A stretch of DNA of 64,000 nt, taken from Octopus sinensis. Lineage: Eukaryota. The notes beneath the pieces were generated by a model, which saw only the letters and a program-made list of their open reading frames with translations, made no database searches and was not told the origin of the DNA. The translations under genes and the position numbers were made by a program. Location of the stretch: contig NC_043015.1 of NCBI RefSeq assembly GCF_006345805.1, positions 3,038,001-3,102,000 on the forward strand, read 5' to 3'. This document shows, piece after piece, positions 19,493 through 55,860 of this stretch. Numbering within the stretch: position 1 is the first letter of the stretch; every line of letters begins with the position of its first letter.

Positions 19493-20027
19493 AGTGTTTG
19501 TCTGTGCGTGTGTGTGTGCGCCTGAACCTGTGTGTAAATACGTGTGTGTGTATGTGTTTGAATGTCATTATGTATATCATATATCAACAACTGAAAATTT
19601 TGAGAACAATGGTTTGTATTATTTAAAAGATATTTTAATACAGGGTATTTTATTATCAAATTTCAACACAGGCACATATATACGAACACACTTATACACT
19701 CCTGCACACACATGCGCACAAACCAGCGCATACACATATATGCACGTGCACACTAAATCACATAACTATATGTGGGCGTCTTTCCATGAACACACAACAC
19801 AAATATAAGTATTCCTTTGTGTATGTAGAAGTGTTAGATTGCAGTGTATACGTATAACTATTAATACTGTAATTGTTAATATCTTTATATGCCTCATAAG
19901 TAAATTAAATTCTCGCTAGTCGAGTCTCCTACATAAATGTGCAAGCCGGCGTACATACAGACACTATATATATCTGTGTTGTACTATATTTGTGTATAAC
20001 TCATTTAAGTTCAGAATAATCATTATA

Positions 20028-20062
<35 letters not shown>

Positions 20063-20316
20063 AGTTTAACATTAAGGATACTCTCTTAATAAGGGATCTT
20101 AACAAGAAATTAGCGGCTAGCTAGCGTGAAAACCTCATAAAAGAAAAGAATTCGAAAATAATTTTTTTTCTTTTGAACAAATTAATTATATCTATATTGG
20201 TATAGAGGGCATTATTACACATAAATGCCTCACACTAGGAGGGACAAAGTCATTACTACCAAAAATATCACTAATCATACCCAATGCAGTTTTTCAAAGC
20301 AAGACATTTAAAAAAT

Positions 20317-20385
20317 GAATTTAGTTCTGTATCACCGTGATTTCACATTCAACTTACGTCTAATGATCGTCAGCAGAACTGATTC
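20317..20385 (-). ncRNA. Type I hammerhead ribozyme, array copy 1 (minus strand)
   Basis: Reverse complement of AGTTCTG-CTGACGA-TCATTAGACGTAAGTTGAATGT-GAAA-TCAC-G-GTGA-TA^CAGAACT; predicted cleavage 3' of the nucleotide at 20330 on the minus strand. Confidence 0.85.
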
Positions 20386-20801
20386 TGAACACATCATAAA
20401 TAACTACCAACCTTACGTAGCGAAACGACGAACAGACAACTGCTCACTCCCTCCGCCAAGCACATGGAATGTTTTATAATCATATATCCGTAAATGGCGG
20501 GCTTTTTACGAACTGCATGTCGGGTAATGAAAAGTATTTCGGAATAAGTTTAACAATTAAGGATAATCCTCTAATAAGGGATCTTAACAAGAAATTATCG
20601 AGTAGCTAGCGTGAAAAACTCATAAAAGAAAAGAATTCGAAAATAATTTTTTTTCTTTTGAACAAATTAATTATATCTATATGTATAGAGGGCATTATTA
20701 CACATAAATGCCTCACACTAGGAGGGACAAAGTCATTACTACCAAAATTATACTAATCATACCCAAATGCAGTTTTTCAAAGCAAGACATTTAAAAAAAA
20801 T

Positions 20802-20872
20802 GAATTTAGTTCTGTATCACCGTGATTTCACACATTCAACTTACGTCTAATGATCGTCAGCAGAACTGATTC
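20802..20872 (-). ncRNA. Type I hammerhead ribozyme, array copy 2 (2-nt insertion beside helix II)
   Basis: Same motif; reads tttcacacattc instead of tttcacattc (real insertion or sequencing error). Confidence 0.7.
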
Positions 20873-21377
20873 TGAACACATCATAAATAAACTACCACCT
20901 TACGTAGCGAAGACGAACAGACAACTGCTCACTCCGGCCAGCACCATGGAGTTTATAAAATCATATATCCGGTAAATGTCTTGCTTTGAAAAACTGCATT
21001 TGGGTATGATTAGTATAATTTTGGTAGTAATGACTTTGTCCCTCCTAGTGTGAGGCATTTATGTGTAATAATGCCCTCTATACAATATAGATATAATTAA
21101 TTTTTTCAAAAGAAAAAAATTATTTTCGAATTCTTTTCTTTTATGAGGTTTTCACGCTAGCTACCCGATAATTTCTGGTAAGATCCTTATTAGAGATTAT
21201 CCTAATTGTTAAACTTATTCCGAAATACTTTTCATTACCCGACATGCAGTTCGTAAAAAGCCCGCCATTTACCGGATATATGATTTATCAACATTCCATG
21301 TGCTTGGCCGGAGTGAGCCAGTTGTCTGTTCGTCTTCGCTACGTAAGGTTGGTAGTTTATTTATGATGTGTTCAAAC

Positions 21378-21435
21378 AGTTCTGCTGACGATCATTAGAC
21401 GTAAGTTGAATGTGAAATCACGGTGATACAGAACT
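21378..21435 (+). ncRNA. Type I hammerhead ribozyme, array copy 3
   Basis: Helix I 21378-21384/21429-21435; CTGACGA 21385-21391; GAAA 21414-21417; cleavage after A21428. Confidence 0.85.
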
Positions 21436-21859
21436 AAATTCAATTTTTTAAATGTCTTGCTTTGAAAAACTGCATTTGGGTATGATTAGTATAATTTTGG
21501 TAGTAATGACTTGTCCCTCCTAGTGTGAGGCTTTATGTGTAATAATGCCCTCCTATCTATACAATATGATATATTAATTTGTTCAAAAGAAAAAAATTAT
21601 TTTCGAATTCTTTTCTTTTATGAGGTTTTCACGCTAGCTACCGATAATTTCTTGTGTAAGATCCCGTATTAAGAGATTATCCTTAATTGTTAAACTTATT
21701 CCGAATACTTTTCATTACCCGACATGCAGTTCGTAAACCCCGCCATTTACATTTACCGGATATATGATTTATAAACATTCCATGTGCTTGGCCGGAGTGA
21801 GCGTTGTCTGTAGTCGTTCTTCGCTACGTAAGGTTGGTAGTTTATTTATGATGTGTTCA

Positions 21860-21928
21860 GAATCAGTTCTGCTGACGATCATTAGACGTAAGTTGAATGT
21901 GAAATCACGGTGATACAGAACTAAATTC
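21860..21928 (+). ncRNA. Type I hammerhead ribozyme, array copy 4
   Basis: Helix I AGTTCTG 21865-21871 / CAGAACT 21916-21922 plus distal GAAT/ATTC; CTGACGA 21872-21878; helix II CATT/AATG, A.G mismatch, GAC/GTT, GUAA tetraloop; GAAA 21901-21904; helix III ATCAC-G-GTGAT; cleavage after A21915 (AUA). Confidence 0.9.
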
Positions 21929-22339
21929 ATTTTTTAAATGTCTTGCTTTGAAAAACTGCATTTGGGTATGATTAGTATAATTTTGGTAGTAATGACTTTG
22001 CCCCTCCTAGTGTGAGGCATTTATGTGTAATAATGCCCTCTATACAATATAGATATAATTAATTTGTTCAAAAGAAAAAAATTATTTTCGAATTCTTTTC
22101 TTTTATGAGGTTTTCACGCTAGCTACCCGATAATTTCTTGTTAAGATCCCTTATTAAGAGATTATCCTTAATTGTTAAACTTATTCCGAAATACTTTTCA
22201 TTACCCGACATGCAGTTCGTAAAAAGCCCGCCATTTACCGGATATATGTTTAAAAACATTCCATGTGCTTGGCCGGAGTGAGCAGTTGTCTGTTCGTCTT
22301 CGCTACGTAAGGTTGGTAGTTTATTTATGATGTGGTTCA

Positions 22340-22408
22340 GAATCAGTTCTGCTGACGATCATTAGACGTAAGTTGAATGTGAAATCACGGTGATACAGAA
22401 CTAAATTC
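22340..22408 (+). ncRNA. Type I hammerhead ribozyme, array copy 5
   Basis: Identical core to copy 4; CTGACGA 22352-22358; cleavage after A22395. Confidence 0.9.
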
Positions 22409-22523
22409 ATTTTTTAAATGTCTTGCTTTGAAAAACTGCATTTGGGTATGATTAGTATAATTTTGGTAGTAATGACTTTGTCCCTCCTAGTGTGAGGCAT
22501 TTATGTGTAATAATGCCCTCTAT

Positions 22524-22595
<72 letters not shown>

Positions 22596-22699
22596 TATAT
22601 ATATATAGAGAGAGACAAAGAGTACACACGTCACTATAATTTATACATAAAAATAGAAATATGGGGAAAAACACGCAAATCATCCAGACAGACGATACA

Positions 22700-23380
22700 A
22701 AGGAATCAAGGACGGATTATTCGAACTTTTCTATTCTTAGTCAAGTTCCAGTTTATCTTTGCAATTTCAGCTGGTCATACCCGAGATTGTTCCAATCTGC
22801 GAGCTCCAAGGAAAACAGTTAAGAGCATTAGCTTTCTTGTAAGAAAGCAGCAAATGTATACGCAAAGAAGGACGGAAAAAAGGAGAATTGTTACATAAAT
22901 ACAAATGCAATTAACAAGACATAAAAGAGGTGTCTTTCGTCCAAGGACGAAGTAAATATAGTTGGCGTGTGTGGAGGTAAAGCCTTGCGGCCGGGTCATG
23001 GGATAAGACAGAGACAGGAAGATATAGATGTTGCACGCATGTTAGTCGAACCATGAAAGAAAGGTCAGACTTGGCCGAACACCGGGTTAGAAGAGAAAGA
23101 GAGAGAGAGAGGCAGAAACAGAGGAATGGAAGATTTAAGGAAAAAATGAAAGAATCCTGTTAATTGCATTTGTATTTGTGTAACATTTATCCGTTATATT
23201 TTCGTCCTTGTTTTCGTATACATTCGCTGCTTTCTTTCAGGGAACATAATGCTCTTAGTTTAGTTTTTCGTTGAGGACTGGCCAGATTGGAGCAATAACG
23301 AGCATAACCAGCCGAAATTGCAAAGACAATCTGAAACTCGACTGAGGAGAGAAAACTAGGAATGACCAGTCCTTGTTTTC
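22700..23380. repeat. Two diverged copies of one dispersed repeat in inverted orientation (22700-22919 and 23155-23380)
   Basis: tctttgcaatttc.gctgg...gaaagcagc.aatgtatacg...ttaca.aaatacaaatgcaattaaca.ga is present on opposite strands, roughly three-quarters identical by eye; HHR-core-like remnant CTGAGGA...GAA...GTC at 23342-23371. Confidence 0.8.
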
Positions 23381-27679: not shown

Positions 27680-27898
27680 ATTCTTGATGGTGATGATGTT
27701 GATGATTATGATGATGAGGATGAGGAATGCGAAGATGAGGGGGAAGAATATGAGGAGGAGGGTGACGACGACGACAGCGACGATGACAGCGTCAGCGATG
27801 ATGACGAAGACTGCGACGACGACAACGATGATGACGATGACGAATAAGATGATGATGCTGCCGATGATGATGATCATGACGATGATGATGATGATGAC

Positions 27899-27974
<76 letters not shown>

Positions 27975-28201
27975 GTGGTGATGATGATGATGATCATGAC
28001 AATGATGATAACTATGATGACGATGATGATGATGATTGTGATGATAACGGTGATAACGGATGAAGATGATATCACGGCGAGGACGACAATGGAAACAAAG
28101 ACGATGATAGATGACTATGATGATGAAGCAAACGAAAACGATGATGACAATAAATATAGTGATGGTGATGAGGAATATTATGATGATTGTAAATATGATG
28201 G

Positions 28202-28234
<33 letters not shown>

Positions 28235-28380
28235 CAACCACGACGACGACGACCATGATGAAGATGATGACGCGGATGCTGATGCGGATGGTGGTACAAT
28301 CTACAAAGATTATGGTGAATAGAGAGGCGACGATGATGTCGATGAATACAACACCGATGACGATGCTGATGATTACGACT
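27680..28380. repeat. Degenerate (GAT/GAC)n trinucleotide field
   Basis: Directly visible; source of the poly-M, poly-D and poly-H ORFs. Confidence 0.92.
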
Positions 28381-28659
28381 GCTTCTCTTAAAACACCCCT
28401 TGATGTTCAGCGAACACAGCAAAATATCCATAAATACATTCCATTTATATTATTCTGGGAACACAATTAATTCTATGATATCAATGTCATGCGTATTACG
28501 ATATACGATTTGATATCTACAATCGCAACATCTGAGGTAATAAAATGATACACTTCTCATGGGGTTAAACCACATTAGGCAGAGATAAAAGCATAACCTA
28601 AACAACAGCCTACTAGTTTATTGTAAATGTGCTGTTGTGATCATTGCTGTTGCTCTTAC

Positions 28660-28679
28660 TATTATTATTATTATTATTA

Positions 28680-28739
<60 letters not shown>

Positions 28740-28814
28740 TATTATTATTATTACTATTATTATTATTATTACTATTATTAGTGTTATTATTATTATTACT
28801 ACTATTATTATTAC

Positions 28815-28847
<33 letters not shown>

Positions 28848-29004
28848 CATTATTACTATTATTATTGTTATTATTATTATTACTACTACTATTATTATTA
28901 TTACTACTACTATTATTATTATTACTATTATTATTGTTATTATTATTATTAGTGTTATTATAACTACTACCACAATTACTACTACTACTACTACCACTAC
29001 CACT

Positions 29005-29085
<81 letters not shown>

Positions 29086-55610: not shown

Positions 55611-55681
55611 AGATATATAGTAAAGATTATTTACTTTATTTACAATTGACAGATTTTTGTTATCATCTTGTTTGTTGTTAA

Positions 55682-55720
55682 CACAATGTTTCGGCTGGTA
55701 TACCCTCCAGCCTTCATCAG
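55682..55720 (-). ncRNA. Penelope-type hammerhead remnant
   Basis: Minus strand CTGATGA-A-GGCTGG-agggtata-CCAGCC-GAAAC-ATTGTG; perfect 6-bp helix II but helix I not formed. Confidence 0.55.
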
Positions 55721-55791
55721 GTGTCTTGGGAAAATTTCGAACCAGGGTTCACATTCCTAAGGAATTTTACGATGGTGTTGTTGTTATCGTA

Positions 55792-55860
<69 letters not shown>

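What the first reader, a model, noticed from the sequence alone, without database searches (positions are those of the whole stretch)
20063..22531. ~480-bp tandem array with an intact type I hammerhead ribozyme in every unit: candidate cephalopod retrozyme/circRNA family
Seen in sequence: each complete unit contains AGTTCTG-CUGACGA-[helix II]-GAAA-[helix III]-AUA^-CAGAACU, with a perfect 7-bp helix I (plus a 1x2 loop and 4 more bp), and the catalytic core is identical in all five copies even though the rest of the units carry indels. Predicted cleavage sites at 21428, 21915 and 22395 are 487 and 480 nt apart. Established knowledge: HHR tandem arrays of this type (Schistosoma Sm-alpha, newt satellite 2, cave-cricket pDo500, coral and mussel non-LTR retrozymes) are transcribed as multimers, self-cleave to monomers and circularise. 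Inference: this is a ~480-nt octopus retrozyme, longer than most described metazoan ones; I do not know of it being described, but cannot search.
Basis: partly seen in the sequence, partly recalled or inferred. Interest (0 to 1): 0.92.

Follow-up and report, generated by a model that had tools for sequence, protein, structure and literature searches.

The report
Octopus hammerhead retrozyme, Penelope-style insertion
This 2.5-kb block is one insertion of a young, non-coding 480-base mobile element whose every unit carries a self-cleaving hammerhead RNA motif; it is a new cephalopod member of the known animal "retrozyme" class, and its insertion scars point to copying by Penelope-like retrotransposon machinery.

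Summary
The repeat and the five hammerhead motifs are real, at the stated coordinates. The block is not a simple tandem array. It has two head-to-head arms: 1.9 units on the minus strand (20063-21016) and 3.3 units on the plus strand (20973-22537), set in a (TA)n microsatellite.

The 480-nt unit is a dispersed family about 99% alike, with at least 776 ribozyme copies. A sister family of at least 2185 copies has two compensatory base-pair changes in helix I and a shorter helix II, with an intact core. That supports the fold, although Rfam models give no hit and pair 10.1/11.1 is U.U.

Arms have variable 5' ends. Their 3' ends sit at only two unit positions (~136 and ~269), always joined to (TA)n. 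Every two-arm insertion examined (42 across the genome, 9 in fetched loci, partly the same elements) has one end of each kind. Both arms share private variants. This indicates one reverse-transcription event on one template, with the layout known for Penelope-like elements.

Self-cleavage, circular RNA and expression remain unproven, because only contigs were available. The class is known (Cervera and de la Pena 2020); I found no paper describing it in cephalopods. This scan has already noted the same kind of element many times elsewhere in this genome.

The parts
20024..20061 (.). (TA)n microsatellite flanking the left outer end
20063..20329 (-). Minus arm, terminal partial unit (unit positions 269 to 1). 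The outer 3' end is of 'B' type (...TTAAACT(C)AT joined to ATATAT)
20330..20814 (-). Minus arm, full unit (95.7% identical to the reference unit)
20815..21016 (-). Minus arm, 5'-truncated inner unit (unit positions 276-480, 89% identical, indel-rich)
20973..21016 (.). Inner head-to-head junction. These 44 nt align to both arms because the unit carries an imperfect internal inverted repeat (positions ~20-80 against ~270-322)
20973..21428 (+). Plus arm, 5'-truncated first unit (unit positions 20-480)
21429..21915 (+). Plus arm, full unit (93.8% identical, many indels)
21916..22395 (+). Plus arm, full unit (4 differences from the family consensus); used as the reference unit
22396..22537 (+). Plus arm, terminal partial unit (unit positions 1 to ~136-142). 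The outer 3' end is of 'A' type (...CTATACAATATA joined to TATATA)
22532..22607 (.). (TA)n microsatellite flanking the right outer end
21378..21435 (+). Hammerhead motif, predicted cleavage after 21428
21865..21922 (+). Hammerhead motif, predicted cleavage after 21915
22345..22402 (+). Hammerhead motif, predicted cleavage after 22395
20323..20380 (-). Hammerhead motif on the minus strand, predicted cleavage between 20330 and 20329
20808..20867 (-). Hammerhead motif on the minus strand with a TG insertion in helix II next to GAAA (possibly impaired), cleavage site between 20815 and 20814

Best explanation
The block is a single insertion of a non-autonomous, non-coding retroelement of the animal (non-LTR) retrozyme kind.

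Inferred life cycle: genomic arrays are transcribed as multimers. The type I hammerhead in each unit cuts between A480 and C1. The 480-nt monomer is ligated into a highly self-paired circle. That RNA is then reverse-transcribed at a break in a (TA)n microsatellite by the enzymes of a Penelope-like element.

Shown by the scars: each arm starts (3' end) at one of two UAU-rich sites of the unit (~136 or ~269) joined to (TA)n. It runs round the unit a variable number of times and stops at a variable 5' position. The two arms of an insertion face head to head, use one site each and carry the same private variants. So both DNA ends primed on the same template in one event.

Inferred, not shown: self-cleavage, circularity of the template, and the identity of the reverse transcriptase.
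For: Motif
- Five hits in the window, all in the array, and 0 hits in 400 randomisations.
- At least 776 copies within 3 mismatches genome-wide; the reversed-pattern control gives 0.

Covariation with a sister family of at least 2185 copies (period ~476-485)
- Helix I here is AGUUCUG/CAGAACU. In the sister family it is AGGCCUG/CAGG(U/C)CU. Pair 3 changes from U-A to G.U or G-C (A-U in a few copies) and pair 4 from U-A to C-G.
- Helix II here carries mutually complementary extra segments (CAUU/AAUG). The sister family has a 4-bp stem, and both are capped by GUAA.
- CUGAnGA, GAAA and the AUA cleavage triplet are unchanged. Loop 3 varies (CGG or CUG).

Variants fixed in whole arrays, and so present in the templates
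- Within the ribozyme they fall only at free positions: N7 of CUGANGA (C, U or G, each in several arrays), loop 2 (454insA) and the helix I internal loop (429).

RNA fold
- The plus-strand circle has an MFE of -123.8 kcal/mol, z -5.9, 68% paired, 18 G.U pairs. The minus strand gives z -2.5.
- The hammerhead fold lies within 1.4 kcal/mol of the local MFE.

Insertion scars
- About 20 arrays in fetched loci all end in (TA)n at unit position ~136-143 or ~266-269. Their 5' ends vary from 15 to 446. Arms are always 'minus then plus', with 0-12 nt microhomology or short filler at the junction.
- Genome-wide there are 243 B ends and 270 A ends. All 42 end pairs on C1-C5 are one A plus one B, as are 9 of 9 two-arm arrays in loci.
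- The N7 allele is identical in both arms in 9 of 9 two-arm arrays with a non-C allele.

Match to published Penelope-like insertions (PMC8557442)
- 5' truncation, partial tandems, an adjacent inverted 5'-truncated copy, microsatellite bias and a one-sided 'tail'.

Precedents
- Penelope-like elements are the proposed mobilisers of animal retrozymes (PMC7229834; bioRxiv 10.64898/2026.07.22.740005).
- A U.U pair at the base of helix II occurs in the self-cleaving axolotl HHR_Amex2.
Against: - No Rfam hammerhead model matches, at gathering score or at E<=10.
- Pair 10.1/11.1 is U.U rather than G-C, and the 91-nt ribozyme region alone has no thermodynamic signal (z 0.08).
- There is no solid RNA evidence. 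All runs laid were contigs whose RNA status is a guess, one of them also holds element-(TA)n junctions, and no molecule ends can be seen.
- The only holder on record as RNA is a marine metatranscriptome with 13% of the words.
- No Penelope-like reverse transcriptase was found in the window, and no autonomous partner was identified.
- Target-site duplications cannot be read inside (TA)n, and no empty site was examined.
- Some arrays (C18, L007/L014) are internally heterogeneous, which a single circle does not explain simply.
Confidence: 0.75

Rival explanations
1. The element is a genuine retroelement, but the hammerhead no longer cleaves or is not needed. The template would be a linear multimeric read-through transcript rather than a circle.
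For: - Pair 10.1/11.1 is U.U and there is no Rfam hit.
- Heterogeneous units within the C18 array suggest that a multimer was copied.
- No RNA ends or circles were observed.
Against: - Covariation and complementary helix II extensions between families, and template-level variants confined to free ribozyme positions, indicate selection on the ribozyme fold.
- Most arrays are internally homogeneous for private variants.
Confidence: 0.15
2. It is ordinary satellite or minisatellite DNA spread by DNA-level processes such as unequal crossing-over, extrachromosomal circles or segmental duplication. The hammerhead would be a relic or a chance motif.
For: - The organisation is tandem and AT-rich.
- Every array sits in (TA)n tracts, which are recombination-prone.
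Against: - Hundreds of short dispersed arrays lie on many chromosomes, each with its own private variants.
- 3' ends are fixed, 5' ends are variable, and the one-A-plus-one-B rule holds in 42 of 42 pairs.
- The arms are not mirror images, so fold-back duplication is excluded.
- The motif gives 0 hits in 51 Mb of randomised sequence.
Confidence: 0.06
3. It is a foldback-type or Helitron-like DNA transposon with two defined termini and repeat-filled arms.
For: - There are two constant outer termini, inverted arms and a variable middle.
Against: - The two termini are unrelated to each other, so there are no terminal inverted repeats.
- There are no Helitron TC...CTRR ends.
- Single-arm and sub-unit insertions with random 5' truncation are common.
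- The termini coincide with TA microhomology, as expected for primed cDNA synthesis.
Confidence: 0.04

Closest known systems
Metazoan non-LTR retrozymes (coral, mussel, axolotl; Cervera and de la Pena 2020, PMC7229834)
   Same: - Type I hammerhead in every unit of short tandem repeats.
- Non-coding, with low G+C.
- Highly self-paired predicted monomer.
- Dispersed in many copies, in a genome where Penelope-like elements are also reported (Craig 2021 reports them in Octopus; an untested scan note reports a broken one beside another family).
   Different: - The unit is 480 nt, against repeats of 150-450 bp and circRNAs of ~170-400 nt.
- Helix II is long (about 9 stacked pairs, with an A.G and a U.U).
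- The host is a cephalopod, which those papers do not cover.
- Expression and circularity are not shown here.
Penelope-like elements and their pseudo-LTR hammerheads (Cervera and de la Pena 2014; Craig et al. 2021, PMC8557442)
   Same: - Insertion layout: 5' truncation, partial tandems and an inverted 5'-truncated copy at the 5' side.
- Microsatellite targets.
- Ends that differ between the two sides (the 'tail').
- A type I hammerhead.
   Different: - No ORF: no reverse transcriptase and no GIY-YIG endonuclease.
- Arrays reach about 9.5 units.
- The hammerhead has a 4-bp helix III and full-length helices, unlike the minimal dimer-dependent variants described for Penelope-like elements.
Newt satellite 2 / axolotl HHR_Amex2, Schistosoma Sm-alpha, cave-cricket pDo500
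   Same: - Tandem or dispersed repeats transcribed with a type I hammerhead.
- Axolotl HHR_Amex2 also has a U.U at the base of helix II and still cleaves, mainly as dimers (PMC7229834).
   Different: - The unit sequences are unrelated to those families, judged from recalled published motifs (no sequence comparison was run).
- Helix III here is longer than in the amphibian ribozymes, so monomeric cleavage is plausible.
L1 twin priming (5' inversion)
   Same: - Both DNA ends of the target prime on the RNA.
- This gives head-to-head arms with the 3' ends outside and a microhomology junction inside.
   Different: - The template here is repetitive or circular.
- There are two fixed internal priming sites instead of a poly(A) tail plus a random internal site.
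- The machinery is probably Penelope-like, not L1.

Membership tests
Hammerhead ribozyme, type I | Conserved core CUGANGA ... GAAA, and a UH cleavage site, in the right order | tested here: met
   All five copies have CUGACGA, GAAA and AUA before the cut.
Hammerhead ribozyme, type I | Three helices around the core, with helix I open | tested here: met
   Helix I is 7 bp (+4), helix II is 4+3 bp capped by GUAA, helix III is 4 bp with a triloop.
Hammerhead ribozyme, type I | Helices supported by compensatory changes in relatives | tested here: met
   Compared with the sister family, two helix I pairs differ on both sides, one inner helix II pair differs on both sides, and helix II has complementary insertions. 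This was read by eye from pattern matches, not from a formal alignment.
Hammerhead ribozyme, type I | G10.1-C11.1 closing pair of helix II | tested here: not met
   The pair is U.U here. In the sister family it is A-U, U.U or G.U. An active axolotl ribozyme also has U.U (PMC7229834).
Hammerhead ribozyme, type I | Match to the curated covariance models (Rfam Hammerhead_1 and relatives) | tested here: not met
   No hit at gathering score in the window, and none at E<=10 in 19900-22700.
Hammerhead ribozyme, type I | Self-cleavage | not testable with these tools
   This needs in vitro transcription, or raw RNA reads showing ends at A480/C1.
Metazoan non-LTR retrozyme | Short non-coding tandem repeats, each with a type I hammerhead, low G+C, no LTR/PBS/PPT | tested here: met
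   G+C is 33.5%. No ORF with a Pfam match lies in or near the array. Every complete unit has the motif. The 480-nt unit is slightly above the published 150-450 bp range.
Metazoan non-LTR retrozyme | Many dispersed genomic copies | tested here: met
   At least 240 unit matches on many chromosomes, at least 776 ribozyme copies, and about 250 insertion ends of each type.
Metazoan non-LTR retrozyme | Expressed as linear and circular monomer RNA | tested here: inconclusive
   Contigs of three runs guessed to be RNA hold the unit with wrap-around joints, but DNA cannot be excluded and ends are invisible. One metatranscriptome holds 13% of the words.
Metazoan non-LTR retrozyme | Highly self-paired monomer | tested here: met
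   The circular MFE is -123.8 kcal/mol, 68% paired, z -5.9. The plus strand exceeds the minus strand.
Insertion made by Penelope-like element machinery | 5' truncation, partial tandems, adjacent inverted 5'-truncated copy, microsatellite target, asymmetric ends | tested here: met
   against the description in PMC8557442.
Insertion made by Penelope-like element machinery | An autonomous element (reverse transcriptase plus GIY-YIG endonuclease) sharing sequence with the unit or present in the genome | not tested
An earlier scan note reports a different retrozyme family fused to a broken Penelope-like element; I did not check it.

The most novel reading that the evidence does not exclude
The strict rule that every two-arm insertion has one arm ending at unit position ~136 and the other at ~269, with the same private variants in both arms, would mean this: the two DNA ends of one break in a (TA)n tract prime simultaneously on a single circular RNA at two defined sites, and each is extended by rolling-circle reverse transcription. 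That would be the first genomic read-out of how animal retrozymes, and by extension Penelope-like elements with their one-sided 'tail' and inverted copies, are integrated.
Probability: 0.35. Interest if true: 0.65.

Novelty: new member of a known kind. Interest (0 to 1): 0.45.

Why it matters
- Retrozymes are the main known source of ribozyme-made circular RNAs in animals. How they are copied back into DNA is still only a hypothesis.
- This family is young (about 1% divergence) and abundant, and it leaves unusually legible scars. These are two fixed priming sites, a one-of-each rule for the two arms, and shared private variants.
- Those scars make it a good natural system for testing the proposed Penelope-like, circle-templated integration.
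- It also extends retrozymes to cephalopods, with a larger unit and a remodelled helix II.
- For genome annotation, these blocks should be labelled as retroelement insertions, not satellites.

Tried and rejected
- **Rfam:** at gathering score and at E<=10 there was no hammerhead hit, only chance microRNA-like hits in the (TA)n tract.
- **Local fold:** the 91-nt ribozyme region has no thermodynamic signal.
- **Wider genomic context:** Empty sites, target-site duplications and neighbouring Penelope-like ORFs could therefore not be examined.
- **Pattern searches that failed:** Searches for the sister family with helix II gaps of 18-28 and 29-58 gave 1 and 0 matches, because its helix II is only 12 nt.
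- **Reads:** Read laying gave contigs only. There were no molecule ends, RNA status was only guessed, and element-(TA)n junctions were present in one 'RNA?' run, so it says nothing on cleavage or expression. The second run search found only a weak metatranscriptome holder.
- **ORFs:** ORFs of at least 130 aa in the window have no Pfam match.
- **Rejected readings:**
  - Snap-back cDNA or palindromic duplication, because the arms are not mirror images and their ends differ.
  - A TIR transposon or Helitron, because the termini are unrelated and there are no diagnostic ends.
  - A second hammerhead at 55679-55720(-), because it has no helix I and lies in a SINE-like repeat.
- **First shuffling script:** it timed out and was replaced.
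Full report
**Observation**

The sequence at 20063-22537 is a ~480-bp repeat. Tandem Repeats Finder splits it into 20063-20978 (1.9 copies) and 20973-22537 (3.3 copies). Repeat finding and BLAST of one unit show why. The left part is the reverse complement of the right part. So the block consists of two head-to-head arms, not one head-to-tail array. Both outer ends abut (TA)n tracts.

- There are exactly five complete motifs in the 64-kb window, all in this block.
- Cleavage-site nucleotides are at 21428, 21915 and 22395 on the plus strand, and at 20330 and 20815 on the minus strand.
- 400 first-order Markov randomisations of the window (51 Mb, both strands) gave no hit.

The motif reads as follows:
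- AGUUCUG (helix I)
- CUGACGA (core)
- UCAUU-A-GAC-GUAA-GUU-G-AAUGU (helix II)
- GAAA (core)
- UCA-CGG-UGA (helix III)
- UA, then the cut, then CAGAACU (helix I)

- The copy at 20808-20867(-) has a TG insertion next to GAAA.
- The first plus-strand copy lacks the outer 4 bp of helix I.
- The closing pair of helix II would be U.U.

No Rfam hammerhead model matches, even at E<=10.

**A dispersed, young family**

In the window's own assembly (2.72 Gb, 13,516 contigs) the unit window:21916-22395 gives at least 240 matches of 94-100% identity on many chromosomes, out of 834 candidates. The 58-nt ribozyme occurs at least 776 times within 3 mismatches, and the reversed control gives 0. Fifty full units from 30 fetched loci give a 480-nt consensus with about 1% variable sites, many of them single-base indels that may be assembly errors. 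The unit has 33.5% G+C and no coding potential. ORFs of at least 130 aa in the window have no Pfam match.

**Is the ribozyme real?**

Four lines of evidence go beyond the motif itself.

1. Covariation with a sister family.
   - Loose ends in the read-laying led to a more abundant sister family, with at least 2185 copies, a period of ~476-485 and the same arm layout.
   - Its ribozyme region reads AGGCCUG-CUGAUGA-(A/U/G)UAC-GUAA-GUAU-GAAA-UCA-CUG-UGA-UA, cut, CAGG(U/C)CU.
   - Helix I pair 3 is U-A here. There it is G.U or G-C, and A-U in the few AGACCUG copies. Pair 4 is U-A here and C-G there.
   - The innermost helix II stem changes from G.U to U-A on both sides.
   - Helix II of the present family carries mutually complementary extra segments (CAUU/AAUG).
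   - The core, GAAA and the cleavage triplet are unchanged. Loop 3 differs.
2. Template-level variants. Variants present in all units of an array must have been in the template. Inside the ribozyme they fall only at N7 of CUGANGA, in loop 2 (454insA) and in the internal loop of helix I (429). N7 is C, U or G, and each allele occurs in several independent arrays.
3. Accessibility of the fold. The hammerhead conformation lies within 1.4 kcal/mol of the local minimum free energy.
4. Precedent for U.U. A U.U pair at the base of helix II occurs in axolotl HHR_Amex2, which self-cleaves (PMC7229834).

Against this stand the missing Rfam hit and the absence of a thermodynamic signal for the isolated 91-nt region (z 0.08).

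**The monomer RNA**

Folded as a circle, the plus strand has an MFE of -123.8 kcal/mol, 68% paired, with z about -5.9 against shuffles. The fold contains 18 G.U pairs and includes helix I. The minus strand reaches only -94.1 kcal/mol (z -2.5). The excess on the ribozyme strand fits selection at the RNA level and matches the 'highly self-paired' retrozyme circles of PMC7229834.

**Insertion architecture**

About 20 distinct arrays were examined in fetched loci.
- Every outer end runs into (TA)n.
- Outer ends lie at only two unit positions. The 'A' end is at ~136-143 (...CUAUACAAUAUA). The 'B' end is at ~266-269 (...UUGUUAAACUUAU).
- Inner ends vary from 15 to 446.
- When two arms are present they are always 'minus then plus', so the 3' ends are outside and the 5' ends inside.
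- The arms are joined with 0-12 nt of microhomology or 2-15 nt of filler.

Across the genome there are 243 B ends and 270 A ends. I paired each minus-strand end with the next plus-strand end within 10 kb on contigs C1-C5.
- This gave 42 pairs, every one consisting of one A and one B end, in both genomic orientations. There were no A/A or B/B pairs.
- The nine two-arm arrays in the loci, some of them the same elements as those pairs, obey the same rule. In this window the ends are B on the left and A on the right.
- Some pairs are only 110-290 bp apart. These are sub-unit insertions without a ribozyme.

Private variants are shared by all units and both arms of an array. Examples are 441C>U in L016 and L022, 441C>G in L018, and 454insA in L020. 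In 9 of 9 two-arm arrays with a non-C allele at N7, both arms carry the same allele.

The arms are not mirror images, so snap-back synthesis and palindromic duplication are excluded. The two termini are unrelated, so there are no transposon terminal inverted repeats.

**Interpretation**

These features are the published signature of Penelope-like element insertions (Craig et al. 2021, PMC8557442):
- frequent 5' truncation
- partial tandems
- an inverted 5'-truncated copy at the 5' side
- microsatellite insertion bias
- an extension present at one end only

Penelope-like elements are also the proposed mobilisers and ancestors of animal retrozymes (PMC7229834; bioRxiv 10.64898/2026.07.22.740005, which covers vertebrates only).

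The simplest model is that a break in a (TA)n tract provides two 3' ends. They anneal by TA microhomology at the two UAU-rich sites of one RNA template, and each is extended towards the RNA 5' direction, round and round the unit.
- A circular template explains the variable number of units and the one-of-each rule, but it is inferred.
- One heterogeneous array (C18, L007/L014) would fit a multimeric linear template or template switching better.

**RNA evidence**

RNA evidence is weak.
- The unit is held by runs from four organism labels and eight studies. All are kept as contigs, and their RNA status is a guess.
- Laying four of them shows full coverage and wrap-around joints. It also shows (TA)n junctions in one 'RNA?' run and no molecule ends.
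- The only holder on record as RNA is a marine metatranscriptome with 13% of the words.

**Literature and earlier notes**

No paper in the searchable library links hammerheads or retrozymes to cephalopods beyond a mention of Penelope-like elements in Octopus.

I reached the reading above before opening the scan's own notes. Those notes show that the same kind of element has already been reported many times on other pieces of this genome, as families of ~349 and ~481-505 nt with Penelope-style ends. They are unchecked AI notes and were not used as evidence.

I did not verify the taxon.

**Verdict**

This is a real feature, correctly interpreted in essence: a new cephalopod member of a known class. 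The added value here is covariation support for the ribozyme and a strict two-site, one-template insertion rule. Catalysis, circularity, expression and the autonomous partner remain to be shown.

Noticed in passing
G000, e.g. C1:38673733-38679428 (not fetched; seen in pattern matches): A sister retrozyme family is more abundant than the one in the window. It has at least 2185 copies, a period of ~476-485, a short 4-bp helix II, and the same 'minus then plus' arm layout. Position 10.1 varies (A, U or G) opposite a fixed U.
   Followed up: partly
window 55626-55800 (-): A SINE-like dispersed repeat (3198 first-look candidates, ~89% identity, B-box-like GGTTCGAA). It contains a hammerhead look-alike, CTGATGA-A-GGCTGG...CCAGCC-GAAAC, but has no helix I. 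It is probably not a ribozyme.
   Followed up: partly
G000 C1:918924-919060, C1:103851225-103851527, C3:85528190-85528418 and others: A-type and B-type ends lie only 110-290 bp apart. These are very short two-arm insertions of less than one unit, and they must lack the ribozyme.
   Followed up: no
G000 C3:37477808-37477861: A plus-strand B end and a minus-strand B end sit back to back within one short TA tract. Two independent insertions appear to share the same microsatellite.
   Followed up: no
window, whole length: (TA)n/(AT)n microsatellites are very dense, with dozens in 64 kb. Potential target sites for this element are therefore everywhere.
   Followed up: no
window 27685-28284 and 28656-29085: Long GAT/GAC-rich (18-bp period) and TTA/ACT trinucleotide repeat tracts. 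The ORFs across them have no Pfam match.
   Followed up: partly
run X25 (marine metatranscriptome): This is the only run on record as RNA that holds part (13% of sampled words) of the unit.
   Followed up: no
L007/L014 (G000 C18:17892065-17896446): A long two-arm array whose units share different subsets of variants (79G>T, 95G>T, 213C>T, 226T>C). It is not a simple copy of one circle.
   Followed up: no
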